From Octopus bimaculoides (taxonomy: Eukaryota), in NCBI RefSeq assembly GCF_001194135.2, contig NC_068987.1, forward strand, positions 65,033,255-65,097,254: DNA of 64,000 nucleotides, written 5' to 3'. A program made the translations under genes and the position numbers. The notes below the pieces were generated by a model. It was not told the origin of the DNA, searched no databases, and was given only the letters and a program-made list of their open reading frames with translations. Positions 19,145-60,663 of this stretch are shown one piece after another; position 1 is the first letter of the stretch; every line of letters begins with the position of its first letter.

Positions 19145-19209
<65 letters not shown>

Positions 19210-36983: not shown

Positions 36984-39366
36984 AGCCAGCTCACTGCCTT
37001 TGGCTGCTATTTCTACCAGGTCTAGCTACCATGTAGAGGTCTGATCTTAATTTTCATTCATATATTTGCATTTCAAAAATTAAGCATAATCTTTACCATA
37101 AATCAACTATCGTAAAACTATCTATGATAATTATTGTGGGATTTACCATTAAATTAGCAGTTCTATTTGGTTAATCTATATATATATCAAATGGTTCCAT
37201 CAAATGAAATCATACCCCACCAGTGTCAACATGTAATTTTTTTTCCATTTCAATTAAAACAATATAAAATCTTATAAGAGATAATTTTTCTATAGTCAAA
37301 TATAGTACAGGACATTTTATACCATGATGATGACGACAACATCACATTTTGTATATGAGTATGTATGTGTCTGTCAGTATGTGTGTGTGTGTATGAATCT
37401 GTATGTGTCTATCAGTGTGTGTGTGTTTCTGCATTTGATGACGTTACATTTTGTATATGAGTGTCTATGTGTCTGTGAGTGTATGAGTGTGTATGTCTCA
37501 GTGTGTGTGTGTGTTTCCATGTTAGGGATGTTATTCAACACACACACATCTACACATACATGTTGACATCTAACGTGTGAATAAATGTGGTGTGTCTCTG
37601 TCTTACTATATAGTATTACACCCCACACACGACTGTCAATATGTAATTTTTTTTCATTTCCATTAAAGCAATGTAACATTTCATAGGCATAATCTTTCTA
37701 TAGTCAGCTATAGTACAGGACATTTTATATGAGTGTGTCTGTGTGTTTGATACGTACGAGATAGTAAAGGACATTTTATACCATGATGATGATGTCACAT
37801 ATTGTATATCTGTGTGTTTATGTAAGAAATCATTTTTTGCAGATTGGCAGAATCATTAGAGCATTGGTCAAAATGCTTTGCAGTTTTTAGTTATGGCTCT
37901 TTATGTTCTAAGTTCAAATCCTGCTATGGTCAACTTTTCTTTTTATTCTTCCAGGGTTGGTGTAATAAAGTACTCAGCAAGTTCTGAGATCAATAAATTT
38001 GACTATTCATTTCCTCAAATTTATAGTTTTGCAAGAAATATTAATGCTAATTATTATAACAAGTATATTCTGAGTATTAAAACTGTTCTAAACGCCCTCA
38101 TTCAGTGTTTGAACATTGCTGAGTGGTAAAGTTATGTTGAGCAACTGTTGTCACGTGCAGGAGTGATCCACTTATTGACTGACCATCATGTAGTTTGTTC
38201 TGCTACCTTCCTTTGGCTGGGATGAGTAACCAGTTTTCCTCTGTTTGATTGTTATGATGAAAGAGGTTGTGTTATAGATAAGATTGAAAAGACTGAGGAC
38301 AGACAGATACTTTCTTCATTCGCCAAATTCTCACCAACTTGAAAAATTGATGAGAGTTTCATTCACTGAGGATGGTGCAGGTGGATAGGGAGGTGTTGCC
38401 CTCCAGTAAATTTACTGAAAGATGAGTGAGAGTGGTAAGCACAGCCTGATTGAAAGGGACTCATCTCAATATATATGTGTGTGCAGGAAAACACAGCTGG
38501 GAGAGAGCACTTGCCCTTGATTAGGGTAATATTGGATCTATAGATTTTCTTGATTGGTACCAGGTGATTGTCATTCTATCAGGATATCTCAGTTCATTCA
38601 TTTTGAGCACTGATATTTTTCATGCTTGTATTTTCATAATCAATTCTGTATAAATCTTCACTGATTTTTTTGTTAATTTGTTTTAGTAGTGTCCACTCAT
38701 CTATTACTTTGTGTCAAATAAAGATATTGCTATAACTTATCTTCTCCGTTTGTAAGATGGCAGGTTGGCAGAATTGTTAGCATGTCAGACAAGATTCTTA
38801 GGAGCGTTTCTTTTGACTCTTTTACATTCTGTGTTCAAATTCTGCAGAGGTCTACCTTGCTTTTTATCCTTTTGGGGGTTGATAAAATAAGTACCAGTTG
38901 AACTCAGGATCAATGTATTTGATTTATTCGTCCTGTAAAGTTGTTGTCCTTGTGCCAAAATTTAAAACAAATCTAGCTGTAAGTTCATTTATCAACCCTG
39001 AAAGGATGAAAGGCAAAGGTGACTTTGGAATTTGGATTCAGAACATAAAGCTAGAAGATATGCTGCTATGAATTTTGTCAGACTCGCAAATAATTCTTCC
39101 AGCTCACCATCATTATTTCCTCCACTTAGAGATTTATCATTATATGGAAGATGAAGATAGTGTTGAGAACTTCTTACCTGTAAAAGAAAAAAAAAAAAAA
39201 ACAACCTTCGACATTCCTGCTATTGAGAACATGAGTTTCATCTTCCTGAATATCCAACAAAATAATAATGATAAAAAAATTATATCCTAAAATCATTTCA
39301 AATTTCTGTATTGCCTTCTTATGTTTGTGTTATATAATTTAATATAACTTTTTTTTTCTTGCAGAC

Positions 39367-39469
39367 ATGGGTCACACATTATCAGAACCTGTGACTTCGA
39401 AGACTACGTCTAGTTGTGAAAACCATTATGTAAAAGTGGGTTCATCTTGCATGCAAGGATGGCGAATCA
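39367..39469 (+). CDS. ppm-2: PP2C/PPM phosphatase (ppm-2/T23F11.1, Ptc2/3-like), first coding exon
   Basis: Encodes MGHTLSEPVTSKTTSSCENHYVKVGSSCMQGWRI+A, matching the recalled family N-terminus MGQTLSEPV...VGSSCMQGWR. Preceded by acceptor tttttttcttgcag (exon starts 39365) and followed by GTATCCTTTTT. MGxxxS fits an N-myristoylation consensus. The symbol is the closest recalled homologue, not a verified orthologue. Confidence 0.93.
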
Positions 39470-40105
39470 GTATCCTTTTTGAACATTTTGATTTTATTTT
39501 TTCATTCATCACCACAAATGAAGTTGCTAAGATATACACATTTACCAGTGCATATATAGTCATTTATACTTTCATCTTCAATAGCATACATAGATATATA
39601 CCTTCACACACACATATGCACTATTATAATGAAAGCTACAAAAAAACCCAAAAAAACATGAAATACAGCTACCCACTCTTTCCTGGGCATCCTATTAGTT
39701 TATTTTGCATTTTTTAATGATAGAATTCATGCCTATCAATGGTTATAGATGTGCAAATTCCAATGCATCAGGCAACACTGATTCAGATGTTGGCAGGCAG
39801 AAATATTATCCCAAGAAAGATTCTTTATAATAATATCTTTACTGCCTTAACTAATCAAATACTATATATTGCTTGTTGAAAATCACCCACCCACACACAT
39901 GCACACCCCATCATCATCATCATACATCCGTTTTCCATGCTGGCATGGTATGGCTGGATGCCCTTTCTAATGCCAACCACTCCACAAAGTGTACAAGGTG
40001 CCTTTTACATGTTGCTGGCAGGGGTGTTTTCTCGAGCACAGCAAATCACCAAAGGTCTCAATCACTTGTAATCTCTCTCTCTCTCTCTCTCCCTCTCTCC
40101 CCCCC

Positions 40106-40155
<50 letters not shown>

Positions 40156-40786
40156 ATGGTGAGAGAGATTTGAGTAAATAGGAGAAATAGGGAAAAAGTA
40201 GGACTAACTACATATGTATATAAATTGGCTGTAAAGTTACACAAGTGAAACTCTTGGCAACTGAGTCACTTATGTAACTTTTGGAGGAAGTAAGTAAATC
40301 GTGATAGACCATTATTGAAAGCTAAACTTAGTCAATCCCATCTTCCACTCTTATGTTGGTGACAGCCCTGTGGTTTCACCACAGGGTCTACTTTTGCAAC
40401 AAGGCTAAATATATGTTTGGTAAACATATGGTGCTAAATCTACTTACAAATTTAATCTCTCACACACTGCATTGATGCCCTCATACATACATACATGCAT
40501 GCATGCATACATACATGTGTGTGTATACACCAATACATTCCATATCAGAAATGCTGTTTTTATGCCATTCTACTTTTCTTGTGGTAATTGCTGCAGTTTT
40601 GTTATTGCTTATTTTTTTCTTTTGCTTTTTATTTATTTATTTTTTGATAAAAAATTGGTTTCCTTTCAGGAATTTTTTCTGTTTCTGTTATTTTTTTATT
40701 TCAAATTCTACAGATTTTTAAAAAATTATTCTTGTTTATAAAATTTTCACCTTTTCTACTTTTATTTCTTTTCATGAATTTTATTT

Positions 40787-40824
<38 letters not shown>

Positions 40825-41253
40825 TATTATTATAATTTTGTTTTTTCTCTGTCTGTTCTTTGTCATTTATTTATTCGTGCTTGGAGGAAATGTATGATTT
40901 GATTGTGGCAGGGTCTGTGACTGGATCAATACATTCCTTCAGTTGCATTTCCTCTATCCTTCAGCATCTTCAGTTACATCGCACCAACCAACTATTCCAT
41001 CATTGATGTGTTATTGAGATAGATTGTATTGAGATAGATTCTAGCTAGATTCCTAATGATAACTAGCTACTCCTCTGCCCTCCCGTATATAACTTTTATT
41101 CGTCTGTGACCTACTTGAGGAGGGGTGGAGGTGGTGGAATACAATCCTTTCTCTTTCCTCCTACCTGTTCACCCATCTCCCTTCCACCTCACTCTTTTCC
41201 CTGAATTTTATCAATATATCTTCACTCTAATTCTAACAGCTATTGAAGTAATC

Positions 41254-41290
<37 letters not shown>

Positions 41291-41410
41291 TTGAGAGAGA
41301 GAGAGAGACAACCCCCCCCACACACACACACATAGGTGACCATGTAATTATACACATATTCACACATATGCATACTTTTATATGCATATATATTTTTGTT
41401 TGTGTGTATA

Positions 41411-41503
<93 letters not shown>

Positions 41504-41683
41504 GTGTAAACATTCTCAGGTACACCTACTGATACATATATTTTTAAACACCTTCATGTATAGTGATGTTCATCTAATAAATGATAAGTTAAGATATGCA
41601 ACAGCAATAACAACATTCAATTATGCATAGACTGATTTCATATGTTATTTAATACTTCTGTTACTGTTTTTCTGATATAACAT

Positions 41684-42079
41684 AAAGCATAGCTGTGTGG
41701 TTAAGAAGCTTGCTTCCAAACCATGTGGTCTTACATTCAGTCCCACTGTGTGGCATCTTGGGCAAGTGCCTTCTGCTATAGCTTCAGGCTGACCAAAGCT
41801 CTGTTGGTGCATTTAGTAGACTGAATTGAAAGAATCCTGTTATGTGTGTGTGTGTGTGTGTGTGTGTGAGCAAGTGTGTTTGTCCCTCATCACACCAACC
41901 AGTGTTGGTTTGCTTAAGTTTCGGTAACTTAGCAGTTTGGTGAAAAGCGATGGATAGAATAAGAAACAGGCTTTAAAAAGAAAATCAGTTCTGGGGTTGA
42001 TATGTTTCACTCAACCTTTAGAAACAATGCCCCAATATGTCTGCAGTCCAATGACCAAAACAAGTAAAAGAGAAAAGAT
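41684..42079 (+). mobile_element. SINE family A copy inside the U12 intron
   Basis: Head, body, (TG)n and 3' module ending acaagtaaaagagaaaagata. Confidence 0.8.
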
Positions 42080-42420
42080 ATCAATATTTTCAAATTAATT
42101 TTGAAAACAATCAAGAATTTTGAGGAATTTAGTAAAAGTGGTTTGACTGGTCTCCATTAGTCAGTATATAAGTATATATTTGCAGGCTTGGGCAAGGGTT
42201 CTGTTAGCATGCTAGGTGAAATGCTTAGCAGTATTTCGTCTGCCACTATGTTCTAAGTTCAAATTCTGCTGAGGTCAACTTTGCCTTTTGTCCTTTCAAG
42301 GTCGATAAATTAAGTACCAGTGAAATTTTAGGTCTTGTGCCTATAGTGGAAAGGATTATTATTATTTGGTGATTTGTCAGAATTGTCCAAGTGTCAGAAA
42401 AAATGCATTTGGTTGTTTGT

Positions 42421-42484
42421 GGTAGCATGTGAACTCAGAATGTAAAGAATTAGAATTCTTTACATTCTGAGTTCACATGCTACC
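42421..42484. repeat. Perfect inverted repeat, 31-bp arms, 2-nt spacer
   Basis: GGTAGCATGTGAACTCAGAATGTAAAGAATT-AG-AATTCTTTACATTCTGAGTTCACATGCTACC. Confidence 0.97.
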
Positions 42485-42533
42485 TAGGTCATCTTTGCAT
42501 TTTATTCTTCCAGGGTTGAAACTATCTCTTGTT

Positions 42534-43331
42534 CAGGGTGTCCCAAAAGTCACTGATGGGTTTCAATTTTTAATAACTTTACAAATAAATGTATGAAATT
42601 TTGATATAATATAAAGGACATAATAGAAATGAATATGCACATATCAAATTTTGCAATACGTCAATATCACGTATGAAAAATGACATCATTTAAATGGCAG
42701 TCATTTTTGGCTTCGCACGCCTGTGCTCTTTGCAAAACTTGCACCATAAAACCCTCAAGTTTTCAGATCCCACTTCTCTCATTTCCCTATTGATGTTCTC
42801 CTTCAGTTGTACCAGGGTCTCTGGTTTGTTGACGCAAACCCTCTCTTTCAGGTATCCCCACTATCCGGGTTGGTCAAGTCTGGGGAATGTGAAGGCCAAT
42901 TGACATTGCTGTAGCAGATTATTCTCTCTCCAAAGCACTGCTGTAGCAACTGCATTGTTTCTCTTGTGGTATGAGCAGTTGCCCCATCTTGCCAGAACCA
43001 TGTGTGAGGTCTACTTTGAATGGCCGGGAGCAAAAAAGTTTTAATCATGGATACCTGAAAGAGAGGGTTTATGTTAACAAACCGGAAACACTGGTGCCAC
43101 TGAAGGAGAACATCAATAGAGAAATCAGTAGTGGGGTCTGAAACTCTTGAGGGTGTTACGGTGCCATTCAAGTGATGTTATTTTTCATATGTAGTGGTGT
43201 TGCAAAATTTGTCTTGTGCATATTAATTTCCTTGATGCCCTTTATATTGTATCAAAATTTCCTGCATTTATTTGTGAAGTTAAGGAAGTTATTAAAAATT
43301 GAAACATATCAGTGACTTTTGGGATACCCTG
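42534..43331 (-). mobile_element. Non-autonomous Tc1/mariner (rosa/DD41D-like) foldback derivative
   Basis: TIR CAGGGTGTCCCAAAAGTCACTGAT... at both ends (3 mismatches in 46 bp), TA at the right flank. Transposase remnant WFWQDGATAH...WPSHSPDLTNPD (D40D spacing) and WGYLKERV...HLNDVIFHT*. Arms 42534-42857 and 43049-43331 are inverted copies of the same 3' end. Confidence 0.9.
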
Positions 43332-44690
43332 TATATACTTCTTACTAACCTCAGATGAAAAACAGGCCAACCTCAGTGGGATTTCAACTTTGAATGCAAA
43401 AGGCCAAAACAAAATGGTTATGTATTTAGTTTTCTCTACCATTTCCATTACTCTACCACTTTCATGATGGTGATAGTAATGATAATGATTTTTATTAAAA
43501 TATTTGCTGACTTTTGGATCAAACCATTCTTGCTCAAAATAGCATCCAAATCACCTTTAATAAATTCATGATTGACTTGAAAATAGGAATCCTGTTTTTG
43601 ATAAGTACTATATTTTAAGGCAATCTGTTAAAAAAGAAAATAAAGTTAGGACAATCATCTCTAATATTCTCTGATTGAATAGTAACATTCAGCTAACCCA
43701 CTCAAAAGATGTATTGTGTTTGCATGCCTTGGCTGTTGCTTCATGCATTTGATCTGCTTGCAAAAGGTTTGCTTGATGAGAGAGCTAAATGTATTTTTTC
43801 AACAGCAATAACAAGCACTTTTCATAAACTGCTTAATGCTCTGGATACCAATTACTAAGCGGTCTCCAATAACTGCACATAATTCATTTTGATCTTTCTT
43901 CTGACGTGGATACAATTGAGCATCTTCCATAATCTCAATCCAGCTCGTCCAGATCAATTTTACTATTGATTTTTATGTCCTTACTCTATCTTGGCATTTA
44001 GCATCTATCAACGTATCTCTTACTGCTGTCTTTCACTGTAAAAGCAACATTAAGTCAGTTTTTAGGGAAACTATTTGTGTGTATGTATGTGTGTGTGTGT
44101 GTGTGTAGTAACTGTTTGTATTAATTTAAAAGTGTCAAATACATATTTTGCATGTTTTAAAATCTTTGAAATTTTACTCCATAAATACTCTCATATTACC
44201 CTGTTTCTCTCTCCATGCAAAAATGTGTGCATGCACACTCACACGCATGTAAAAACATATACATGCACATTTTAAATCCTTCCGTCAATGTCAAGTAACA
44301 CTTTGATCCCACACTGTTCACTGCCTCTCCAACTCTCGCTGATTTGTTCAACCACATGTACATACGTCTTCCCCACAAACATGCAAACATGAATAAACTA
44401 GATTCTTCCTTTTTACAAGGTCTCATGCACTCACATCATGCCTCCTTTCTCCATCCTACCTCACATATCCACAAATATTAACAAACTACTTTCCTCAAGA
44501 TGTATCAGGAATCTTGGTGTATATTATTTAAAGGAAAATTCAGTTTGAATGCTGGATTATATAAAAATTTTGTCTGTTATCTATCTTGTTTCGTGAAGAT
44601 ATTATTGCAGAACAGCTGTCACTTGATGTGTTAGATTTTTAATCCTTTTAATTCCTGATTTTACCAAAATCTGCGTTAAGAGAAGAAACA

Positions 44691-44914
44691 TTAACCCTTT
44701 TATTACCATATGTCTGTTTAAATACACTGCCTTTAATTCATTTAATTTTGAAAATAGGGATTTAGTAAAATAACTTCATTATTAAGCTGGTGTTTGGTAT
44801 ATAAATTAACACGAAATTTTGATGAAAGATTTTAATTTAGCTTATTTTAAAACCAAAAGTTTGTATCATATGAATAGGGGCAGACTCAGGTGAGTTGGGG
44901 GTCAATAGAGTTAA
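44691..44914. mobile_element. Second TTAA-ended MITE family
   Basis: TTAACCCTTT start and degenerate ...GAGTTAA end; similar interior at about 59175-59385. Confidence 0.45.
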
Positions 44915-45166
44915 AAGAAGAAACAGCACTAACAAGTCTATCATTAGATCCTTATTGAAGCAAAGTGAAAATATTGTATATCAAAATAGTAATTCAGATT
45001 TCTTACTAGAGCTTAAAGCCAGTTTTTGGTGGTGATGGTGGAGTTGGGATCCTAGTAAACTAAATTAATCTCTTCCTCTCTTAAGTGGTGGTTCTATTGT
45101 AAATTTCAATTTAAGAACATATAAGCTGAAATCAGATCTAGTAGGACTGAAATTTAGATCCTAGAC

Positions 45167-45498
45167 CAGGCCTGACCAACTTCAATTACATTGCGGGCCA
45201 CTTTAATCACAGAAAGTATTTTGAGGGCTGCTTGTATACTGGTAGAATTCAAAGCATTTTGCTTTCTCATGCTATTATTACAACAATGAATGAATGATTG
45301 TTGATTCAACATGAAATATTATCATTGTGAAAACAGTGGTATCTTTCTTTTTTACTTCTCATTACGATCTTTAATTTTTGGTAAAAATTTTTTAAATGTT
45401 TGTTCAAATAAACCCATTTCAAGAAAGTATCAAGTGGGCTGCAAGATAAGAGTCTGCAGGCTGCATGCAGCTCACGGGCCTCAGGTTGGCCAGCCCTG
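45167..45498. mobile_element. hAT (Charlie-like) MITE, 332 bp
   Basis: TIRs CAGGCCTGACCAACTT and CAGGGCTGGCCAACCT (reverse complement); 8-bp TSD TCCTAGAC / ACCTAGAC; subterminal GCGGGCC-type motifs. Confidence 0.85.
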
Positions 45499-46043
45499 AC
45501 CTAGACGAAAGAGCCTAAATATTGGTCTAGTGTACTACTGCTAAGACTGGCTGATGGTCTTTTTTTGAAGTATTGAAAATTAAGAGATGAGTTATCAATA
45601 AGATTATAGTTAACAGATTTCAGATATTTGGAGATTAAAAATGTTTCTGTACTTTACATACATCAGTGGCCTATCATCATTGTCCTTGTTGTTCTTGTCA
45701 TCATCATCATTTTACATTACTATCATCATCATCATTTTACATTTGCTTTCCATGCTAGTATGTGTTGGATTGTCAGGGTTTGAGCCAGTTCTTATTCAGA
45801 ACTGTTGCCCTCCTATGTGGGTCAGAGGTTCATGTCTTGCTCATATGTTCCAGCACTTGAAGAAAATAATCATTATTATCCTTAGGGCAGAAATAAAAGT
45901 ACCCAGCTCAAATCTAACATGGTATTGTATGTCTGTTGAAAAATCTGATACATAATGATTGAAATGCAATGTAGGTGAAGATATCTGGAGAAATGTGTCA
46001 TGCATAACGGTGACATAAATAATTTTAAAATGTTTTATGAACA

Positions 46044-46708
46044 TAAAACTTTGTAAATGCTATATGGATAACATTTGGCCTCGTCAGAGAGACTGGTTAT
46101 CCTTTTCAGACATCTGAAATAATTCCAGCATTAAATAACTTCTTGCATTTTATAAAGCCCAAATGTGTCCTATACTAGGTACACATTAAGTTCACTGTAC
46201 CCATTTTAAACACAAATTCTTGACCACATCTAAGAAATGAATATGTTATCTGCTTTCAGGTAAACATTTATTTAACAACACTCTGTAAACTAATTCTCTG
46301 GTTGACCATAAAGCTGTATCATCTATCTCTTCTGCTGCTATTACTATGGCTTCAGTTTCTCTGATTACACCAGTTATAATGCATATTAACTCCATCTAAG
46401 CACACTTGATGCATTCGCATCACTTTCTTCTTATTTTTTGCTGTTTTGCTTCCAAGATACCCTAAATTGCTTTACTTTGCTATCCCTCCACCTCCCATCA
46501 AATGTAATCCATATGGAACTCACTTCTGCTTATTTTTATGCATGCATGTAAAACTTTATAAATTCTATGTGAATAACATTTGGCCTCATCAGGGAGACTG
46601 ATTATCCTTTCCAGACATCTGAAATAACTCCAGGAATGAATAACTTATTACATTTTACAAAGCCCAAATGTGTCCTATACTAGATACACATTAAGTTCAC
46701 TCTACCCA
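46044..46708 (+). repeat. Local 160-bp direct duplication
   Basis: 46044-46203 and 46549-46708 align without gaps by eye, with scattered substitutions. Confidence 0.9.
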
Positions 46709-46972
46709 GTGAAGTTTAAGTTATGTACTGGAGGTGAACAAATCAACTATATCTGGCCTAAAATAATGCAAATTCATTCATCTTGATCTGCTAGAAATAG
46801 AAGCTGAATCAAACCCCAAATTTGTGGCACGTTTTTTCTGTTTTCCTTTTCCCCTTTTACCATACTTTTTCTGTCTTGCAACTTACTTGGAGACCTCACT
46901 AACATTAATTGCAGGAAAAAATGCTTAAGGTGGTTGGTGTCAGGGAGAGCTGTAGAAAACATGTCAAATCTG

Positions 46973-47520
46973 CATTATTTACATTTGACGGATATTTGTC
47001 CGCATCTTGTTTGTTGTTAACACAACGTTTCAGTTGATATATCCTCCGGCCTTCTTCGGGTGTCTTGGGGGAAATTTCGAACCTGTGTTCTCATTCCTAA
47101 GGTATTTTTTTCAATGTTATTATCATCATTATTGTTCAGGTCACTGCTTGGAATCAAACTCGGAATCTTGGGGTTAGTAGCCCACGCTCTTGACCACTAC
47201 GCCATATGCCCGTGGGCATATGGCATAGTGGTTAAGAGCGCGGGCTACTAACCTCAAGATTCCGAGTTCAATTCTAAGCAGTGACCTGAACAGTAACGAT
47301 AATAATAACAATAACAATAATAATAATAATAATAATAACAACAACATCAAAAAATACCTTAGGAATGAGAACCCAGATTCGAAATTTCCCCAAGACATGA
47401 GATGAAGGCTGGAGGGTATATCAGCCGAAACATTGTGCTAACAACAAACCAGATGAAGACAAATGTCCGTCAAATGTAAATAATGTACATGACTCATCAT
47501 CTCTTAAATATAGAACTGTA
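46973..47520. mobile_element. Palindromic tRNA-headed, Penelope-LTR-like element (two divergent arms)
   Basis: Arms 46973-47211 and 47214-47485 are inverted copies around GCCATATGCCC-GT-GGGCATATGGC. Each arm has A/B-box-like motifs (TGGCRTAGTGG, GAGTTYRATTC), an AAT/AAC tract and a hammerhead-like segment. Confidence 0.85.
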
Positions 47521-47789
47521 CTAATAAAGATAGTAGAATGGAAATCAGTTTCCTCAGTATGAAGGGAATTTCACTCAGTTTACTTGAATATCAACAACGT
47601 ATAATGCTTTGTTTAAAGAGAGAAAATTTGATGTTGTTGCCTTTGTTTTTTTTCACACCTAATTTCTGCCTGGATTTAACAGGTCAATGATAAACTTCTT
47701 CCAAATGAATCCTAATAATTTATGATACATTTTAATGTTTTCTTTCATCGGTTCCAAGGTAAAAAAAGTAACATGCCTGATTGTTTGAT

Positions 47790-47985
47790 AATAACAATAA
47801 TGATAATAATAATAACATCGAAAAAAAACCTAAGGAATGAGAACACAGGTTCGAAATTTCCCCAAGACACCTGAAGAAGGCTGGAGGGTATATCAACCGA
47901 AACGTGTTAGCAACAAACAAGATGACAAATATCCGTCAAATGTAAATAATGTACATAATTCCTCATCTCTTAAATATAGAACTGT
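47790..47985 (+). mobile_element. Headless 3' copy of the tRNA-headed hammerhead element
   Basis: AAT tract, then aggaatgagaacacaggttcgaaatttccccaagacacCTGAAGA...GAAAC, ending cctcatctcttaaatatagaactgta like the right arm at 47490-47520. Confidence 0.85.
47866..47908 (+). ncRNA. Minimal type I hammerhead ribozyme-like motif (Penelope type), degenerate
   Basis: GACAC-CTGAAGA-A-GGCTG(gagggtatat)CAACC-GAAA-CGTGTT. Sister copies at 15234-15279 (+), 47019-47064 (-) and 47394-47439 (+). Each copy has at least one lesion. Confidence 0.6.
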
Positions 47986-48470
47986 ATGTCAAATCTGATG
48001 CTGGAGCTTGGTGCAGCTCTGCAGCTAACTAGATCATGTCAAACCATCCAACCCATACTTCCATGAAAAATGGGTATTAAATGACAATAGTGATGATGAA
48101 TTTAGGTATGAACTAAAAAAAACAAATATAATGTCATGGTATGAATGAAAACTAAAATACTGTAGTCCAGGTATAGGCTTCAGGAAAAAGGAATACAATA
48201 AGATTATGTAGTCTAGTTATGGGCTATGGTTGAGAAAAAAACAAGAAAAGATGATTGTGGTAGGAACATGCTTAATCACATGACTACTCAAACAAACAAC
48301 TGAAACATGATGTAGCCCTTGGACCCATGAAATCCTGTCAAACCCATGAAATCCTGTAAGCATGGAACTTGGTCATTGGATGATGTTGATGATGTGTTGT
48401 TGTTACTTTATGGTAAGATGTTTTTGTGAAACAGTTCTTTCTTGCAGTTTCATTATCTCCACAACAGTGA

Positions 48471-48482
48471 TTTTCCTTAACT
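48471..48482 (+). promoter_or_regulatory. U12 branch point sequence
   Basis: TTTTCCTTAACT contains the exact TTCCTTAAC consensus, with the branch A about 15 nt from the 3' splice site. Confidence 0.9.
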
Positions 48483-48494
48483 AGGTTCTAACAG

Positions 48495-48578
48495 ATATGG
48501 AAGATGCGCATACACATTTACTGTCTTTACCATCAGATAGAGAATGTTGCTATTTTGGAGTTTTTGATGGACATGGAG
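48495..48578 (+). CDS. ppm-2: PP2C phosphatase, second coding exon (metal-binding motifs)
   Basis: 84 nt, phase 1 to phase 1: (A)AT ATG GAA GAT GCG CAT... = N-MEDAHTHLLSLPSDRECCYFGVFDGHG+G. Completes the RxxMED motif and carries DGHGG. Flanked by CAG and GTAAGT. Confidence 0.96.
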
Positions 48579-48619
48579 GTAAGTTAGAATGCATGAGATA
48601 CTATCTTGAAATCTTTTTT

Positions 48620-48985
48620 TTTGTTTCTTTGGCTTGTTTCAGTCATTGAACTGCAGCCATTGAAGAGTTTAGTCAAACAAATAGATTCCAGTATTTATTT
48701 TACTGGTCTCTTTTGCCAAACTGTGAAGTTACAAGGACATAAACAACCCAACACCAGTTGTCAAGCTGTGGTAGAGGATAAAAGAATCAACACACACATG
48801 TGTGCATGTATGTATGTATGTCTTTACACACACACATACACACACACACACACAGTGGGTTTCTTTCAGTTTCTATCTACCAAATCCACTCAAAAAGTTT
48901 TGGTCAGCCTGAAGCTATAGTAGAAGTAGAAGGCTCAAGGTGCTTGCACAGTGGGGCTGAACCCAAGATCACATAGGAAGCAATT
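48620..48985 (-). mobile_element. SINE family A copy starting about 40 nt after PP2C exon 2
   Basis: Matches family A modules on the minus strand. Confidence 0.8.
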
Positions 48986-51716
48986 TAAGCTCTAATTTCT
49001 AATCCTGCAAGATCTGATTTCACATTTTAAAATTTTGGGTAGGACTGATCTAAATTTGCAACTGAGGTTAACTTTGCTGTTCATCCTTCCTCAGTTGATA
49101 ATATAAGTTTAAGTTATGTATTGGAAGTGAACAAATCAACTATATCTGGCCTAAAATGTTTATCTTTGTTTTTTTTTCTTCATCATTTTATGTAAATTGC
49201 CACATTTTATGGCTGTCGCTGTATCATCCTCATCATCCATTGCTCTGGTGGCAAAGAAGAGAAATGATGATAATAATAATAATCCTTTCTACTGGAAGTA
49301 CAAGGTCTCAAATTTAGGGGAAGGGATTGAGTCAGTTACATTGACCCCAGTGCGTAAATGGTACTTGTTTAATCGACACTGAAAGGATGAAAGACAAAGT
49401 TGATCTCGACAGAATTTGAACTCAGCACGTAGTGGCAGACAAAATACCGCCAAGCATTTTGCCCAGTGAATAATAATAATAATAATATGATCATGTGATG
49501 GAGGCTTGTGTTTGCATGTCATCAAGTCTATTCCTTCTCTTTGAGTGTCTCTTGAGCTCACTGCTGATGCATTGTAAAGGTCTTTTAACTCTGTCACCCT
49601 AATGAAATTCCTTACACATGTATACACATACACACACATATACAAACATACACTCAGTGTGAGTGATTTACATATACAGAGAAAGAGTGAAAGAGAATGT
49701 GGTAAATATATATATAGAGAAAGGGAGATGTTTACAATGAGAAAAGCATAAATAACAGAGAGAGACTGATAGATATATATATAGATAGGCACCTCTCTCC
49801 TCACTAACTTGTATTGCATATCAAGAGAGAGTGGGGAGCAGCATTCATGAGAAAGATACATATACAGAAAGTGAGAGTAGTAGTAGTAAATATATATAGA
49901 GAGGAGAAAATTTGCAATGAGAAATGTCTGAAAGACTGAAAAAGACTGATAAAGAGAGGTAGATAGACTGTTATAAGATGTGACACACACACACACACAT
50001 ACAAATATACACACACTCAGGTAATCATGAGTTTAAGATGGTGGCTTCAAAGACATTCAGTGTTGGTGATCTGAAAGTTGAGTTATTTCTTATAGAAAAT
50101 TATATTTTTTGATTACTGATAATCAAAAAACCTTCTCCTTGGGACGCAGATTTTGAAAATCAAATCTGTTTCTCTCTTGTGTACTGAGTAGAGTAGAGAG
50201 GGCCCTTTTAGATTTGATTTGCTATTGACATGACAACCTCTTTAGTGCCATTGTCACAATAAAATGCACCCAATTTACTCTGCAAATAGTTGGTTTTTGA
50301 TAGGAAGGATATCAAATCATAAAACTATGCCAAAAGCAAGACATACAAGCAAGATGAAATCCTCAAGCACTGGCTCTCAGTATGAACTGGCTTGGATTGT
50401 GACAACCCATTCAACAGATGCCAGCATGGAAAGTACACATAAAGTGATAATGATGATGGATCTTTTAAAGCAGGAGATTTTTGTATCATTTAACTAGAGG
50501 TGGTCTCAGATGGGTTGGTATTAAAAGAGTGAAATGTACTTATAAAGTTAAAGAGATATGTTTTGTCTATCATTTACTTGAATTTGGGTCCCTGTGTTTT
50601 CGATGAGAGATGGGTATTGTTTTTAGCATCACCGTAGTAACACTGATGACTAATGGTATTTTGGACCAGCTAATGTTCTTACATACTAAGTTTGGCTCAG
50701 TGTGTAGCAGCATTGTTACAGTAGACATCATCAATACCATCTTCATCATTTTTATGTCTGCTTTACCATTTAGCCATTATTTAAAATTTTTTTTACTCTT
50801 TTTTTTTCTGATAGATTCAGTGCCAGACTGTTCTTTCTGTTTTCTTAACTTGCTTTGTTGTTGTTTAACCCCGAGTCCACACTAATTGAATATGATTTTA
50901 GAACAAATGTGTTCCACCTGTGACCCTCCCATTTTTCTGTATATCTAGAACTACATTGTTTAATGTATCCATCTTTTTACTTCCATTTTTAAGACAGTAG
51001 CATGTGATTTAAAGGAATTTGGTTGCTGTTTCTAGCTGGTTGAGCAACCTCATAGAGGCTCTCCTCATTGGGTTACTTGCTTTACTTTAGTTTTAATTCA
51101 GATAAACTGACATTGTGGCTTATAACATACTGAGACACCATCACAAGATCTTCCTGTTTTTGACAGATATGCATATCCACATGATGCGTGCATGCACACA
51201 CACACACACACACACACACACCAACTTGCAATGTGCATGCAAGAAAAATGATTGTTTTCCTACTCTCAGGAAGTTTACTTCAAATCATTTCCTGTTGATT
51301 TCTCTTGTGTTGTATTTTTGAGCTTTGATTTGTATTGGGAAAGAATGGAAAAAAATATAATGCTTCTACTGTAAAGACATGGCTGTGTGATCAGGAAGAC
51401 ATTCACTTCACAGCTACATAGGTCCGGGTTCAATCCCTCTGCTTGGTAACTTGGGAAAGTATCTTCTACCACAGTACCAGTTCAACCAGAACTTTCTGAG
51501 TGAACTTGGGTTGATAGAAACTGTGTGGAACTTCATTAGAGAAGCCTTTTCTGATCTTGGGAAGTAGGCATAATCTGCTACCTCATGACTTTTGGGTGTC
51601 TTTACCAAAGTCCTTTCTGTTGCAAGCATTTGGACAAAGTCTTGTGTCTCAAGATATCTGTCTCCCTTCTTTGCACCAGGCTTTGAGGCCCTGATGAAAG
51701 TCATGTGTACTAGTCT

Positions 51717-51788
<72 letters not shown>

Positions 51789-53894
51789 TAGATAGATAGA
51801 TATCTTGGAAAGGCACTTATTAAAATTTCTTTGAAGTGCATATTGCTTTCAAATTTTGGCACAAGGCCAGCAATTTTGAGGGAGAGATAGGTTGATTAGA
51901 TTGACCCCAGTGCTCAACTGGTACTTATTTTATTGATCCTGGAAGAATGAAAGGCAAAGTTGACCTCGTAATTTGAACTCAGAATGTAAAGATGGATGAA
52001 ATGCTGCTAAGCATTTTGCCTGATGTGCTAATGATTCTGCCATCTCACACCTTAAAATTTTTTATAAGTGTATATTGAGTGTGCATTCCAAAATTATCAT
52101 CATTGTAATTGCAATGGTGGATAGGAAGAAGTACTAGCATATCAAGCAAAATGCCTTGCTATGTTTTTTCTGGTTCTGTATGTGCTGAGTTCAAATCCTG
52201 CTGTGGTCAACTTTGCCTTTTATCCTTTCAGGGTCAATAAGTAAAGTGCCATTTGAGTGCTAGGATCAATTTAATCAACTAATCCTCTTCTCCAAATTTC
52301 AGTCCTTGTGCCTATATTAGAAATAATTATCAATATAATTTTATTTTTATTGCAGTGAATTGGCGGAAATGATAGAGCATCAAGCTAGCCTTACAGTTTT
52401 TAGTCATGTCCTTTCATAAAAGTTTAAATCCTAAGAGTGTTAACTTTTAACCTTCAGGAATCAATAGAAATAAATGAGTAGCTGTAAAATGCTGAAAGTT
52501 AGTTTCAATTAACTATACCCATCGACTGTAGATGTCTTGTTTTGTGCTAATATCATCGTCATTATTACTATGAGCAAGTAGTTAGTACTGATGTAATTTA
52601 TGGTGATATGTAGTTGGGTGAGATTGTTGTGGACATACAAGTCTTCATGATTCTACAAGACTACAAAAGAATACCAGATCTATTCCCTGTAGGACTATCC
52701 CAGGCAGAAACACAAGCTGCGATACATATAGCAGTAAATATCATTTAAAGGCTTTCTGCCCAAAATATTTGAAAGCAGGAAATCAACAACAATAGCAGCA
52801 ACAAATCATGGAGACTACTGGACTACTGTTCATTAGGGGCAACTCTGAAGATACTGGAAAAAAAGTTGCCATGTGCTCTTCTTTAGGGTTTAATCAGAAG
52901 TTTGAAAGCTCTCTCCCACTAGTATAACTGTGATATAACAATGAGCAAGTGACAAAAAGAGGGAACGATTAACAGAAGCAACAGCACCAAGTAGCTGTCA
53001 TCAAAACTATGTAAGGAGCTAGAAGACTTGCCTTGTAGTCAACACAAGAAAAGTGAGGTAAGCAAGAGCGTTCATTTGTGAAGATGAAAACAAAATGCAG
53101 GCTGATGAGGACTGGCTGCTCAATACAGGAGAAATAGAAAAGTTTCCAGAATAGCACAGAAGAACTGAGAGCTCTGGCAATCATGTAAATACACAGTCCT
53201 TGTCAAAAACAATACTGAACAGGTCCAAGACCTAAAAAGAAGATATTCCCTCCAATGTATGGATAGATGAGGGGTTGGGAGTTTACAACTTATCATTGCC
53301 AAGAGTAAACTGCAAAGTTAATCTTGGCAGCATGCATTCTGAGATCACATGCCACTGAGATCAACTTTACCTTTCATCCTTTCAGAGTCAATAAAATTAG
53401 TACCAGTAGAGCACTGGGGTCAATGTAATTGACTGACCTCCTCCACTAAATTTCAGGCCTTGTGCCTATAGTAGAGAAAATTATTGTTACTATAACAATA
53501 CTCCTTATTTAATTATGTACAAGCAAGAACTTTCAAGAACTTCATAAAAACCAGTTTTCACCTATCTTGGCTGATCTTTCATGTAACAGAAAAAAACTGC
53601 TGGAAAATGCTGACAAATATTTTAACTCTGAAAAGTTGTTCTTGATCTTCTTAAGGCTCAATTCCAACAAATTTGGGATAGAGATGCTGCAACACAAACA
53701 TTTAAGACTGCATTTACAGAGGGTCTCTCATTAATCATAAATATGTGTCATCATCATCATCATCATCATCATCGTTTAACGTCCGCTTTCCATGCTAGCA
53801 TGGGTTGGACGATTTGACTGAGGACTGGTGAAACCGGATGGCAACACCAGGCTCCAGTCTGATTAAAGTTAAAATCATGAGTTTAATAAACATA

Positions 53895-54098
53895 TGAGGA
53901 GGTGCTGAAAAATTCCTAAGTTTAAAGGTACTGTGAAAGGCTTGTTGGAGGCCTACCTTCTGAGTTCTTTTACAGGGCTTAGAAAGACTGAAGGACTGCT
54001 GCAATGAGTGTGTGAATCTGAGAAGGGAACATGTTGAAGAAAATAATGATTATTGTATTTTCTTTAACCAAAGGCAGGAACTTTTCAGCACCCCTTCA
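53895..54098 (+). mobile_element. mariner-derived MITE, 204 bp
   Basis: TIRs TGAGGAGGTGCTGAAAAATTCCT and TGAAGGGGTGCTGAAAAGTTCCT (reverse complement), TA TSD. Interior reads QGLERLKDCCNECVNLRREHVE, a mariner transposase C-terminus. Confidence 0.85.
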
Positions 54099-55004
54099 TA
54101 TTTAGTCTCCCAATAAAAATAGGTTCCATGGTTAAACCTCAAAGTTTTTATCTGGTTGAAAAGATAATCATACTGGTGAGTTTCATCTTTCTTAAGATTC
54201 ACCAGAAATTGCATATCTCTTTCTTCCAAACTGCTAAGAGAAAGTAGATTAGAACTACTTGTTAAAATATTGTGAAGATTAGGAATGCAATTGTTCATTT
54301 ACATAATGATATAAAGATGCAAATTCTCACTCATCAGTATATAATAAAATCTAACCCAGCAGTGTTTTCACTCCTCCTTCCTCTCTCTCATTATTTCCTC
54401 TGCTCTTCTGAACTAGTAAGTTGTGTGACACATCTTCACAGACCTATCTTCATTCCAAATTAATTACTTTCTCATGGACCTTCTTTTAATTACAGTTAGC
54501 TCTCTTGGAGAATAAAAGTTTATTTCTGTTGAAGATGTAATTGATTGATGTGACTACTCCATTTTATTTTTAGACTATCCAGAGTTGTGTTATTCAATGT
54601 GTGATGTATTTTTGTTAATCTGGCAGAATGTGATTTGAGGGTGATTTAGCTGCTAATTCTAACAGGTCAAGCAACCACGGGGAACTCCTCTCATTGGTTC
54701 ATGGAAGGAAGAGATGGCTAGGCTTAATCTTAATTTGTTCTTGAATTATAAGTGCGTTACATTTCTATTAGTAAGTTTTAATGAACAATTTCTTCTGAAC
54801 AAATGCTTAAAAGTTTGTACATGGTATGGCTGTGCGGTAAGAAGCTTCTTTCCCAACCACATGGTTCCAGGTTCAATCCCACTGCATGGCACCTTGGGGA
54901 AGTGTTTTCTACTGTAGACTTGGGCTGACCAAAGCCTTGTGAGTGGATTTGGTAGCTGGAAACTGAAAGAAGTCTGTTGTATGTATGTGTGTGTGTGTGC
55001 CACA

Positions 55005-55720
55005 TGTCCATATCAGCACAATCGTCTCTCTTGCACACCACAACTGATGCTTCTTACGTCTAACATTTCTGTCAAGGTACTTACACTCTGTCGAGTATGC
55101 ACACTGACATTACACATCCATCGAAGCATACTGGCTTCGTTTCTTGCAAGCTTACGCATGTCATCAGCAGTCACGGCCCATGTTTCACTGCCATGAAGCA
55201 TGGCGGTTCGTACACATGCGTCATACAGTCTGCCTTTTACTCTGAGTGAGAAGCCATTTGTCAACAGCAGAAGTAAGAGCTCTCTAAACTTTTTCCAGGC
55301 TATTCTTATTCTAGCAGCTACACTTTCAGCGCACCCTCCCCCGCTACAAACTCGGTCACCTAGATAGCGGAAGCTATCAACTACTTCTAGTTTTTCTCCC
55401 TGGAGTGTGGCAAAGGTTGTTTTCTGCACATTTTCAGTGTTTATTGCTCCTGAGCATCTGCCACATACAAAAACTATCTTGCTAGTTAGCCTTCCTTTGA
55501 TATTGCTGCACCTCTTATGTGTCCATAGCTTACACTGGGTACATCTTATGGAGTTTCGACCTACGCCTTTTCTACAGATCGAGCAGGCCCATCTACCTGA
55601 AGGGGTTTGTGTTTTGTCTACCTTCCTACTTATTAGGACTTTGGTTTTAGCGAAGTTGACTCTAAGGCCATTCAATTCTAGTCCTTGCTTCCACACCTGA
55701 AACTTCTCTAGTTCTGATGG
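55005..55720 (-). mobile_element. RTEX-like LINE RT fragment with embedded PHD-type zinc finger
   Basis: 227-aa open frame: GLRVNFAKTKVL, C4HC3 finger, LEVVDSFRYLGD, RIRIAWKKFREL, KGRLYDACVRTAMLHGSETW. Same family as the 2.8-3.7 kb fragment. Confidence 0.9.
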
Positions 55721-56224
55721 CCAGGAACCTAAAACTTAGATCTTGCTTGAACTTATGAAAACTGCTTATTTTATCTATTTGATTATTCTCATTAACTTGC
55801 TGTTTTAGAGCTAACTTCAGTGTTACTTCCTGTGTCTATATTAATGTTACTGAAAATTTTCTTGACTATTGAACTATTCTTCAATGTGCATTTTTTTTAA
55901 TGTTCTGTATATTATATTTCAGCTGAAATACTAGTTCTGTGCTTTGGTGTTTATGAGAAAATTTCTTAGATATGTTTAAATTGTGGCATTTTTTAAAAAC
56001 ACCTACTTACATATAGAATGAGGAAGGTTAATTAATTTTCTTATTGGTTGTATGGTTTATTGTTGGTAAGTATGTGAGTAGAGAAATAACTTAAATATAT
56101 AGGCACAGGTGTGGCTGTGTGGTAAGAAGTTTACTTTGCACTGTGCAGGTACTTTCCTATTATAGCCTTGGGCTGACCATAGTTTTGTAAGTGAATTTAG
56201 CAGACAGAAACTGAAAGAAAACTG

Positions 56225-56263
<39 letters not shown>

Positions 56264-56282
56264 CATACATACATTCATTCCC

Positions 56283-56629
56283 ATCAAAACTTCTGTCAAA
56301 TGTAAGCATATCAGGCCAGATATTGTTTGGGACACAGGGGCAAAGGTATGTACCATCATAGAAGTTAGGTGCCCTGCAGATATAAATATCTCTTTGAAAA
56401 TCAAAGAAAAACAGGATATCTATGGACAAGCTTCTATATCTAGACTTTGAATTCATATTCATATCAATAATGATTCAAGGAGCACTAGGTTTTGTTAGTA
56501 AATGCTTAAAGGAGAATCTGGATAAACTGGGATTCTTAGAAAAAGAAACTGACTGGCTGATTTGTACAAGTCCAATCTGTGAGTGGAACAGTAAAAATAT
56601 GCAAAACTTTTCTCAAGTTCCAAATGTGA
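56283..56629 (+). mobile_element. R4/Dong-like non-LTR retrotransposon, restriction-like endonuclease C-terminus (frameshifted)
   Basis: Pieced frames give IKTSVKCKHIRPDIVWDTGAKVCTIIEVRCPADINISLKIKEKQDIYGQ / LLYLDFEFIFISIMIQGALGFVSKCL / VQSVSGTVKICKTFLKFQM*, with the RPD...EVxCP and GALG motifs of RLE domains. Confidence 0.75.
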
Positions 56630-60597: not shown

Positions 60598-60663
60598 GGG
60601 CTAAAGTTGCTCAGTATGCAGGGAATAACTTGCACAAAAGAATAGTTTGCAGTGAATACTACA
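60598..60663 (+). CDS. ppm-2: PP2C phosphatase, third coding exon
   Basis: 66 nt: (G)GG GCT AAA GTT... = G-AKVAQYAGNNLHKRIVCSEYY+A. In frame with exon 2, matches the helix after DGHGG. Pyrimidine tract plus AAG acceptor and GTAAGT donor. Confidence 0.93.

What the first reader, a model, noticed from the sequence alone, without database searches (positions are those of the whole stretch)
39470..48494. 9-kb U12 minor-spliceosome intron splitting the catalytic RxxMED motif of a PP2C
Seen: GTATCCTTTTT donor, TTTTCCTTAACT branch point and a CAG 12 nt later, in phase 1 inside the Asn codon of WRINMED. The intron holds SINEs, two DNA-transposon derivatives and three strong foldback structures. If retained, the frame reads on to a stop at 39717, giving a 116-aa product without catalytic aspartates. 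Known: minor introns are rare, often ancient and can be rate-limiting. Inference: an on/off control point for this phosphatase. Whether this intron position is recorded as U12 in this subfamily is unknown to me.
Basis: partly seen in the sequence, partly recalled or inferred. Interest (0 to 1): 0.72.

Follow-up and report, generated by a model that had tools for sequence, protein, structure and literature searches.

The report
Ancient U12 intron in octopus PP2C
The 9-kb gap between the first two coding exons of an Octopus bimaculoides PP2C phosphatase gene is a textbook minor-spliceosome (U12-type) intron, found at the same site in snail-like molluscs, a tick and a starfish, so it is real and old but ordinary, and the idea that it acts as an on/off switch is untested.

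Summary
Exon 1 (ATG 39367 to 39469) ends in a GTATCCTTT donor at 39470. TTTTCCTTAACT lies at 48471-48482, and CAG ends at 48494. Phase 1 rebuilds Asn35 of WRINMED. Read-through stops at 39715-39717 (116 aa).

The gene is Octopus bimaculoides "probable protein phosphatase 2C T23F11.1". All seven RefSeq isoforms already use this junction.

The U12 reading is strongly supported:
- Both 12-mers are identical to catalogued human or mouse minor introns.
- The donor matches the U1 consensus at only 3 of 9 positions.
- An intron with U12 signals sits at the same codon and phase in four mollusc loci (one is AT-AG), the tick Rhipicephalus sanguineus and the starfish Asterias rubens.
- It is absent from Nematostella and a beetle.

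The intron therefore dates at least to the bilaterian ancestor. Its 9-kb size comes from interspersed repeats and foldback elements.

The "on/off control point" is a generic hypothesis about minor introns and nothing here tests it. Splitting RxxMED has no shown significance.

Verdict: an ordinary new member of a known kind, of low interest.

The parts
6971..7034 (+). Alternative 5' exon of RefSeq isoform X1 (MGFNSLFVYLTISMLQNFVCL + G), followed by a U2-type donor GTAAGT at 7035. It splices over about 32 kb to the exon starting at 39365.
   Evidence: tblastn 21/21 identical to P0189; sequence.
39365..39469 (+). First common coding exon. It follows the acceptor ...ttcttgcag. ATG at 39367. It encodes MGHTLSEPVTSKTTSSCENHYVKVGSSCMQGWRI plus the first base of Asn35.
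   Evidence: 100% identical to O. bimaculoides XP_052825691 and other isoforms.
39470..39478 (+). U12-type 5' splice site GTATCCTTT.
   Evidence: Unique in the window. The 12-mer TCAGTATCCTTT is identical to the MIDB minor introns of SLC35B4 and Polr3c, which score 92.7-94.9. It matches the U1 consensus at 3 of 9 positions.
39470..48494 (+). U12-type GT-AG intron, 9025 nt, phase 1.
   Evidence: The junction is used in all RefSeq isoforms.
39715..39717 (+). First in-frame stop (TAA) if the intron is retained. The product would be 116 aa.
41368..41513 (.). (TG)n(TA)n(CA)n microsatellite palindrome inside the intron.
41685..42324 (.). Interspersed (SINE-like) repeats with several diverged copies elsewhere in the window.
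   Evidence: blastn of the intron against the window.
42534..43331 (.). Foldback element of about 800 bp with long terminal inverted repeats (a candidate DNA-transposon derivative). It contains a 107-aa ORF at 42848-43171 on the minus strand.
   Evidence: z = -30. No Pfam hit for the ORF.
46968..47490 (.). Near-perfect 520-nt foldback made of inverted copies of a repeat with a tRNA-like core. A further copy lies at 47788-47986 and a related copy at 15081-15333.
   Evidence: -345 kcal/mol, z = -33.
48473..48481 (+). U12 branch-point sequence TTCCTTAAC. The branch A (48479 or 48480) is 14-15 nt from the 3' junction.
   Evidence: The 12-mer TTTTCCTTAACT is identical to the MIDB human HTT and INSIG1 branch sites, which score 100.
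48493..48494 (+). 3' splice site AG (CAG). No strong polypyrimidine tract precedes it.
   Evidence: 65% pyrimidine in the last 20 nt, against 75-80% for the two neighbouring U2 acceptors.
48495..48578 (+). Coding exon 2 (84 nt): the last two bases of Asn35, then [27 protein letters not shown] and the first base of Gly63.
48579..60597 (+). Next intron, U2-type (GAG|GTAAGT ... pyrimidine tract ... AAAG), about 12 kb, phase 1.
   Evidence: This intron position is shared with Nematostella, starfish and mollusc loci.
60598..60663 (+). Coding exon 3 ((G)GAKVAQYAGNNLHKRIVCSEYY), followed by a GTAAGT donor. The rest of the gene lies beyond the window.

Best explanation
Positions 39470-48494 are a canonical GT-AG U12-type (minor-spliceosome) intron in the Octopus bimaculoides orthologue of C. 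elegans ppm-2/T23F11.1, a PPM1A/B-related PP2C phosphatase.

Mechanism (inferred from established knowledge of U12 splicing, not shown here):
- U11 and U6atac recognise the GTATCCTTT donor.
- U12 pairs with TTCCTTAAC.
- The CAG about 14 nt downstream is used as acceptor, rebuilding Asn35 between Arg33 and Glu37/Asp38 of motif I.

The intron is inherited from at least the last common ancestor of protostomes and deuterostomes. It was lost in insects. It is absent from Nematostella, either by loss there or by gain after the split.

Its 9-kb length is secondary, caused by insertion of interspersed repeats and foldback elements.

It is most likely spliced constitutively. Any kinetic bottleneck is the generic one shared by minor introns. 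A retained transcript would carry a premature stop 246 nt into the intron, so it would be nuclear-retained or degraded rather than make a useful 116-aa protein (inference).
For: Shown here:
- Exact consensus donor and branch site at the right places.
- Both 12-mers are identical to catalogued human or mouse minor introns with high PWM scores.
- U1 complementarity is 3/9, against 8/9 for the neighbouring U2 donor, and the pyrimidine tract is weaker.
- The spliced product equals all RefSeq O. bimaculoides isoforms.
- The product matches spliced transcripts or protein models of cuttlefish and another mollusc.

Orthologous introns at the same codon and phase with U12 signals:
- Asterias rubens: GTATCCTTT...TTTCTTAAC.
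- Rhipicephalus sanguineus: GTATCCTTT...TTCCTTGAC.
- Mollusc loci L001, L004 and L011: GTATCC donors.
- L002/L003: ATATCCTTT...TTTCTTTAAC...TAG. This GT-to-AT switch keeps the rest of the motif, which is typical of U12 introns.

Literature and repeats:
- Molluscs, ticks and starfish are reported as minor-intron-rich, and minor introns as biased away from phase 0 (PMC10639083).
- The repeat origin of the intron's length is shown.
Against: - No RNA-seq reads or minor-spliceosome perturbation data for octopus were available. Use of the sites rests on gene models, relatives' transcripts and conservation.
- The minor snRNAs of octopus were not examined here.
- The branch-to-acceptor distance in starfish (17 nt) is at the long end.
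- One locus (L007-L010) has only a degenerate branch motif, and its donor was not on the contig.
- Absence from Nematostella leaves open whether the intron predates Bilateria.
Confidence: 0.92

Rival explanations
1. The minor intron is a regulated on/off valve for this phosphatase. Under some tissues or conditions it is retained, so the mRNA is held back or degraded (or a 116-aa catalytically dead N-terminal fragment is made), and phosphatase level is set by minor-spliceosome activity.
For: - Minor introns as a class can be slowly spliced and controlled through unstable U6atac (PMC3728624, listed).
- The intron lies early in the gene, before any catalytic residue, and retention gives an early stop.
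- The type and position have been kept across more than 500 Myr of bilaterian evolution.
- An unfollowed lead: a Logan contig ORF (P0194) of another Octopus species starts exactly at the Met of MED. That is what a transcript retaining the intron's 3' end would give.
Against: - Nothing specific to this gene was found.
- All annotated Octopus bimaculoides and O. sinensis isoforms, plus an O. vulgaris entry, use the same junction. They differ only in 5' exons.
- A beetle and Nematostella do without the intron while keeping the protein motif.
- A pan-eukaryotic survey argues that much of minor-intron retention in evolution is neutral (PMC10639083).
- P0194 may simply be a 5'-truncated contig.
Confidence: 0.12
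2. It is a U2-type (or hybrid) intron whose ends merely resemble U12 signals and which is removed by the major spliceosome.
For: - The termini are GT-AG, as in U2 introns.
- A good U2-like acceptor (ttctttcttgcag, ending 48447) lies 47 nt upstream of the proposed one.
Against: - The donor matches U1 at 3 of 9 positions.
- ATCCTT at +3 to +8 and the TYCTTRAY motif 9-17 nt from the acceptor are conserved across three phyla, while the surrounding intron sequence is not.
- An orthologue begins with AT, which a U2 intron ending in AG would not tolerate.
- Use of the 48447 acceptor would add 47 nt and break the frame, and no annotated isoform does so.
Confidence: 0.03
3. Artefact: the two exons are joined only by a mis-assembly or belong to a pseudogene, so the 9-kb 'intron' is not a real transcript feature.
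For: - The window is a draft assembly with runs of N at about 10.1-10.7, 19.1 and 21.3-21.7 kb.
- The intron is repeat-rich.
Against: - No gap lies within 39470-48494.
- Exon order, phases and sequences agree with RefSeq models made on a 110-Mb chromosome-scale record.
- The starfish orthologue has an intron of similar size, 9684 nt.
Confidence: 0.01

Closest known systems
U12-type (minor, GT-AG subtype) spliceosomal introns, as catalogued in MIDB, U12DB and intronIC surveys
   Same: - Same 5'ss core (GTATCCTTT) and same branch motif (TTCCTTAAC) 14 nt from the acceptor.
- Weak pyrimidine tract and non-zero phase.
- A single minor intron among U2 introns.
- Deep conservation, with GT/AT subtype switching in an orthologue.
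- The 12-mers are letter-for-letter those of the SLC35B4/Polr3c donors and the HTT/INSIG1 branch sites.
   Different: - Nothing structural differs.
- The host gene family (PPM, T23F11.1 type) is not among the human and mouse minor-intron genes listed in MIDB.
- In the top 120 hits I saw no vertebrate orthologue, so this intron has no mammalian counterpart.
C. elegans PPM-2 (T23F11.1) and the PPM1A/PPM1B group of PP2C phosphatases
   Same: - Orthologous protein (RefSeq name; 70-80% identity among invertebrate orthologues).
- Pfam PP2C hit at E = 1e-74.
- The closest solved structures are an Anopheles PP2C (2i0o), PPM1B (2p8e) and PPM1A (1a6q).
- Same MGxxxS N-terminus, and Arg33/Glu37/Asp38 numbering as PPM1A.
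- PPM-2 is known to act on DLK-1 downstream of RPM-1 in neurons (PMC4014440).
   Different: - C. elegans has no minor spliceosome, so it cannot have this intron (established knowledge).
- From memory, human PPM1A and PPM1B encode this region in one large exon.
'Minor introns as molecular switches' model (Younis et al. 2013, PMC3728624)
   Same: The model would apply to any U12 intron, including this one: slow splicing, retention and decay of the unspliced RNA.
   Different: No evidence here that this intron is limiting or regulated. The model was established in human cells for other genes.

Membership tests
U12-type intron | 5' splice site matching /RTATCCTT directly at the exon end. | tested here: met
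   A|GTATCCTTT at 39470. The 12-mer is identical to MIDB entries scoring 92.7-94.9.
U12-type intron | Branch-point sequence TCCTTRAY about 8-20 nt upstream of the 3' splice site. | tested here: met
   TTCCTTAAC at 48473-48481, with the branch A 14 nt from the junction. The 12-mer is identical to MIDB entries scoring 100.
U12-type intron | Allowed terminal dinucleotides (GT-AG or AT-AC; rarely others such as AT-AG). | tested here: met
   GT...AG in the window. Orthologues are GT-AG, with one AT-AG.
U12-type intron | Poor fit to U2-type signals (U1 complementarity, polypyrimidine tract). | tested here: met
   3/9 matches to CAG|GTAAGT, against 8/9 for the next donor. 65% pyrimidines against 75-80% at neighbouring acceptors. 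The pyrimidine difference is modest.
U12-type intron | Intron type conserved at the orthologous position in other lineages that keep the minor spliceosome. | tested here: met
   Same codon and phase with U12 motifs in starfish, tick and four mollusc loci. Absent, not converted, in Nematostella and a beetle.
U12-type intron | The organism has minor-spliceosome snRNAs (U11, U12, U4atac, U6atac). | not testable with these tools
   No snRNA gene in the window (Rfam). The literature lists Octopus sinensis and molluscs as minor-intron-rich (PMC10639083).
U12-type intron | Excision depends on the minor spliceosome. | not testable with these tools
   Needs RNA-seq and U12/U6atac perturbation.
PP2C / PPM phosphatase (T23F11.1 = PPM-2 orthogroup) | PP2C catalytic domain with motif I (RxxMED) and motif II (DGHGG). 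| tested here: met
   Window exons give ...[10 protein letters not shown]...FDGHGG. The full RefSeq protein, identical over the window's 85 residues, hits PF00481 at 1e-74. It aligns to PDB PP2C structures.
PP2C / PPM phosphatase (T23F11.1 = PPM-2 orthogroup) | Orthology to T23F11.1 rather than to another PPM paralogue. | tested here: inconclusive
   The best named hits across phyla all carry the RefSeq name 'probable protein phosphatase 2C T23F11.1'. No tree was built.

The most novel reading that the evidence does not exclude
The minor intron, kept at the very start of the catalytic domain of a neuronal-signalling PP2C (the PPM-2 orthologue) for the whole history of Bilateria, is a true dosage valve in cephalopods. 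Slow or regulated U12 splicing across a 9-kb intron with very stable foldbacks would set phosphatase output in specific tissues or temperatures.
Probability: 0.1. Interest if true: 0.45.

Novelty: new member of a known kind. Interest (0 to 1): 0.2.

Why it matters
It adds one clean, deeply conserved example to the catalogue of minor introns. The host gene family (PPM-2/T23F11.1-type PP2C) is not among mammalian minor-intron genes. The case shows a useful loss/retention pattern:
- kept in molluscs, tick and starfish;
- absent in a beetle and a sea anemone;
- a GT-to-AT subtype switch in one snail-like lineage.

It is a good control locus for minor-intron annotation in cephalopod genomes. It does not change understanding of splicing or of PP2C regulation unless retention is shown to be regulated.

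Tried and rejected
- Rfam and ARAGORN on the whole window found nothing, so the SINE call rests on repeat copies and a tRNA-like core seen in the fold.
- Exact look-up of the 116-aa read-through ORF found nothing on record.
- Look-ups of the Octopus isoform X3 and the amphioxus isoform also found nothing.
- tblastn with a recalled human PPM1A sequence found only exons 1-2. Exon 3 was found only with mollusc sequences.
- Literature searches for PPM1 or PP2C together with minor or U12 introns gave only unrelated papers: PPM1D in clonal haematopoiesis, and maize ZmPP2C26, whose odd splice is explicitly neither U2 nor U12.
- The supplement of PMC10639083 held as text has no gene list.
- Pfam gave no hit for the ORF at 42848-43171 that I thought mariner-like.
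- The second + strand TTCCTTAAC at 60937 was considered as another U12 branch site and rejected. The intron it lies in starts with GTAAGT, and no exon follows at the right distance.
- Skipping of the 84-nt exon 2 would keep the frame. I rejected it as a likely product because it would pair a U12 donor with a U2 acceptor, and no isoform shows it.
Full report
**What is in the sequence**

The + strand carries a coding exon that follows a U2-type acceptor (ttcttgcag, ending at 39364). Its ATG is at 39367, and it reads MGHTLSEPVTSKTTSSCENHYVKVGSSCMQGWRI plus one base, ending at 39469. The next bases are GTATCCTTTTT.

At 48471-48482 lies TTTTCCTTAACT. Twelve bases later a CAG ends at 48494. After it the sequence reads AT ATG GAA GAT GCG CAT..., that is (N)[27 protein letters not shown], up to 48578, followed by a GTAAGT donor.

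Joining 39469 to 48495 gives A|AT = Asn35 in phase 1. Residue numbering is then Arg33, Glu37, Asp38, as in human PPM1A. Reading through the donor instead gives a 116-aa ORF that stops at 39715-39717. Every coordinate in the finding is therefore right.

**More than chance**

- GTATCCTTT occurs once in the 64-kb window on both strands taken together (0.69 expected). That one copy sits exactly at the exon end.
- TTCCTTAAC occurs twice on the + strand. One copy sits 13 nt before the frame-restoring AG.
- The looser donor RTATCCTY occurs only twice on the + strand.
- The joint placement has a chance probability of the order of 1e-10 (my estimate).

**Which gene and which organism**

A 63-aa query found mainly short exon-sized ORFs. 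A nearly full-length spliced transcript contig from a related mollusc (L006) was then used as a query. It found the family "probable protein phosphatase 2C T23F11.1" in molluscs, annelids, chelicerates, insects, echinoderms, hemichordates, amphioxus and cnidarians.

The Octopus bimaculoides RefSeq proteins are identical to the window over all 85 residues encoded by exons 1-3. This includes SDRECCYF, where O. sinensis and O. vulgaris have SDRDCCYF. The alternative 5' exon of isoform X1 is in the window at 6971-7034, at 21/21 identity, followed by GTAAGT. The window is therefore O. bimaculoides.

All seven RefSeq isoforms, the six O. sinensis isoforms, an O. vulgaris entry and a cuttlefish protein read ...GWRINMED.... 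The isoforms differ only upstream of the ATG exon.

The protein hits Pfam PP2C at 1e-74. It aligns best to an Anopheles PP2C structure (2i0o) and then to PPM1B and PPM1A. Its C. elegans namesake PPM-2 regulates DLK-1 with RPM-1 in neurons (PMC4014440).

Exon 3 is at 60598-60663. The rest of the gene lies beyond the window.

**Is it U12-type?**

- The 12-mer TCAGTATCCTTT is letter-for-letter the donor listed for SLC35B4 and Polr3c in the MIDB table of human and mouse minor introns. The PWM scores there are 92.7-94.9.
- TTTTCCTTAACT is the branch-site 12-mer of human HTT and INSIG1, which scores 100.
- The donor matches the U1-complementary consensus at 3 of 9 positions. The neighbouring U2 donor matches at 8 of 9.
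- The last 20 nt before the acceptor are 65% pyrimidine, against 75-80% at the two neighbouring acceptors.
- Phase 1 fits the known bias of minor introns away from phase 0 (PMC10639083).

**Conservation**

| Locus | Source | Donor | Branch site and acceptor | Intron length |
|---|---|---|---|---|
| window | Octopus bimaculoides | A\|GTATCCTTT | TTCCTTAAC, 13 nt to the junction, CAG | 9025 nt |
| L001 | ENA contig, mollusc-like | A\|GTATCCTAT | TTCTTTAAT, 10 nt to the junction, CAG | 934 nt |
| L002/L003 | two copies on one ENA contig; closest named protein Gigantopelta aegis (87% in a rough blastx sum) | A\|ATATCCTTT | TTCTTTAAC, 8 nt to the junction, TAG | 1222 nt |
| L004/L005 | Logan, mollusc-like | A\|GTATCCTTG | ATCCTTAAC, 9 nt to the junction, CAG | 965 nt |
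| L011/L012 | Logan; closest named protein Batillaria (90% in the same rough sum) | A\|GTATCCTTG | TTCCTGAC, 9 nt to the junction, TAG | 1725 nt |
| L014 | starfish Asterias rubens | A\|GTATCCTTT | TTTCTTAAC, 16 nt to the junction, TAG | 9684 nt |
| L015 | tick Rhipicephalus sanguineus | A\|GTATCCTTT | TTCCTTGAC, 14 nt to the junction, CAG | 662 nt |

All sit at the same nucleotide of the same codon.

- Outside the two motifs the intron sequences are unrelated. The motifs are therefore under selection.
- The AT start in L002/L003, with the rest of the donor intact, is a subtype switch typical of U12 introns.
- One further locus (L007-L010) has only a degenerate branch motif. Its donor was not on the contig.
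- Nematostella encodes residues 1-63 in one exon.
- A genomic contig of the beetle Gonioctena, and several unnamed contigs, read straight across WRINMED.

The simplest history is presence in the common ancestor of protostomes and deuterostomes, with loss in insects. Whether it predates Bilateria is open.

Human and mouse minor-intron gene lists contain no PPM1 gene. No vertebrate appeared among the best 120 family members.

**Why 9 kb**

The intron has no assembly gap. It contains:
- repeats with diverged copies elsewhere in the window, at 41685-42096 and 42202-42324;
- an internal duplication, 46044-46203 and 46549-46708;
- an 800-bp foldback element at 42534-43331;
- a 520-nt near-perfect foldback at 46968-47490, whose centre looks tRNA-derived, with a third copy at 47788-47986;
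- a microsatellite palindrome at 41368-41513.

As RNA, the two large foldbacks fold at -345 and -411 kcal/mol (z about -33 and -30).

Orthologous introns of 0.7-1.7 kb in the tick and the snail-like loci show that the length is not needed for function. The label 'DNA-transposon derivative' is plausible for the foldback elements but unproven, because the one ORF has no Pfam hit.

**How it most likely works**

Shown: the signals, their conservation, and the spliced product.

Inferred from established knowledge:
- U11/U12 di-snRNP recognition of the donor and the branch site.
- U6atac at the 5' splice site.
- Use of the first suitable AG 10-15 nt after the branch.
- If unspliced, a premature stop 246 nt into the intron. 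That would lead to nuclear retention or nonsense-mediated decay rather than to a stable 116-aa fragment.

The 'on/off control point' is the generic 'minor introns as switches' idea (PMC3728624). Nothing here tests it for this gene. A large survey argues that much minor-intron persistence is neutral (PMC10639083). I give it about 0.1.

That the intron lies inside the RxxMED motif is a positional fact without demonstrated consequence.

**Comparison with the known, and novelty**

This is a standard member of the U12-type GT-AG class, in a gene whose junction is already in RefSeq. I found no paper that names a U12 intron in this PP2C family. Genome-wide catalogues that include Octopus sinensis, Asterias rubens and ticks very probably contain it. 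It is a new member of a known kind, of low surprise.

**Limits**

- No octopus RNA-seq.
- No formal intronIC score.
- Taxon labels for the unnamed contigs rest on best protein similarity only.

Noticed in passing
L002 8776-10000 and L003 8776-10000: The orthologous intron in a snail-like genome (closest named protein Gigantopelta aegis) starts ATATCCTTT and ends TAG. That is the rare AT-AG boundary on an otherwise canonical U12 intron. The RefSeq G. aegis protein reads WRISMED rather than WRINMED at this junction.
   Followed up: partly
L002 and L003 (ENA ERZ25071447 ctg86751, 115037-135153 and 228273-248389 reversed): Two almost identical copies of the PP2C 5' region lie in opposite orientation about 100 kb apart on one contig. 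This is either an inverted segmental duplication or an assembly artefact.
   Followed up: no
window 6971-7034, and RefSeq isoforms X1-X6: Alternative 5' exons carry upstream in-frame ATGs. They give predicted N-terminal extensions of 22-64 residues in front of the conserved MGxxxS N-terminus (a myristoylation-type motif kept in all orthologues). If translated, they would bury that glycine. Only the X1 exon is inside the window.
   Followed up: partly
window 48435-48447: A strong U2-type acceptor-like site (ttctttcttgcag) lies 47 nt upstream of the U12 acceptor. It is a candidate cryptic 3' site if minor splicing fails. Its use would shift the frame.
   Followed up: no
window 46968-47490, 47788-47986, 15081-15333: Copies of one repeat family with a tRNA-like core (…GGCATAGTGGTTAAGAGCGCGGGCTACTAACC…GAGTTCAATTC…). 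Two copies lie head-to-head and form a 520-nt hairpin. ARAGORN and Rfam do not call it.
   Followed up: partly
window 42848-43171 (-): A 107-aa ORF in the loop of the 800-bp foldback element contains …WFWQDGATAHT…WPSHSPDLTNPD…. From memory this resembles the C-terminal DDE region of Tc1/mariner-type transposases. Pfam gives no hit at E <= 0.01.
   Followed up: partly
window 55013-55696 (-): A 227-aa ORF in the second intron has a PHD-finger hit (E = 4.7e-6). It is probably a remnant of a retroelement ORF.
   Followed up: partly
window 32738(-), 43279(-), 48473(+), 60937(+): TTCCTTAAC occurs 4 times against 0.66 expected (1 of 100 shuffles reaches 4). Apart from the real branch site, one copy lies in an arm of the foldback element. 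One lies in the third intron, with no matching U12 donor.
   Followed up: partly
L006 about 250-255: The spliced mollusc transcript contig has TAG where its 97%-identical cluster relative (P0061) and all orthologues have Gln (KVAQYAG). This is a read or assembly error or a polymorphism.
   Followed up: no
window 48579-60597; L013, L014, L015: The next intron (phase 1, after DGHG) is U2-type. It is shared by octopus, the mollusc loci, starfish and Nematostella, but is missing in the tick, where exon 2 runs on to residue 89.
   Followed up: partly
window about 10100-10700, 19100-19200, 21270-21750: Runs of N (assembly gaps) flanked by CA/TA microsatellites. The window is from a draft-quality stretch, but none of the gaps touches the PP2C exons or the U12 intron.
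   Followed up: no
P0194 (Logan contig, 1027 nt; not fetched): An ORF of another Octopus species starts exactly at the Met of MED and runs through the spliced downstream exons. This could be a transcript that retains the end of the U12 intron, or just a truncated contig.
   Followed up: no
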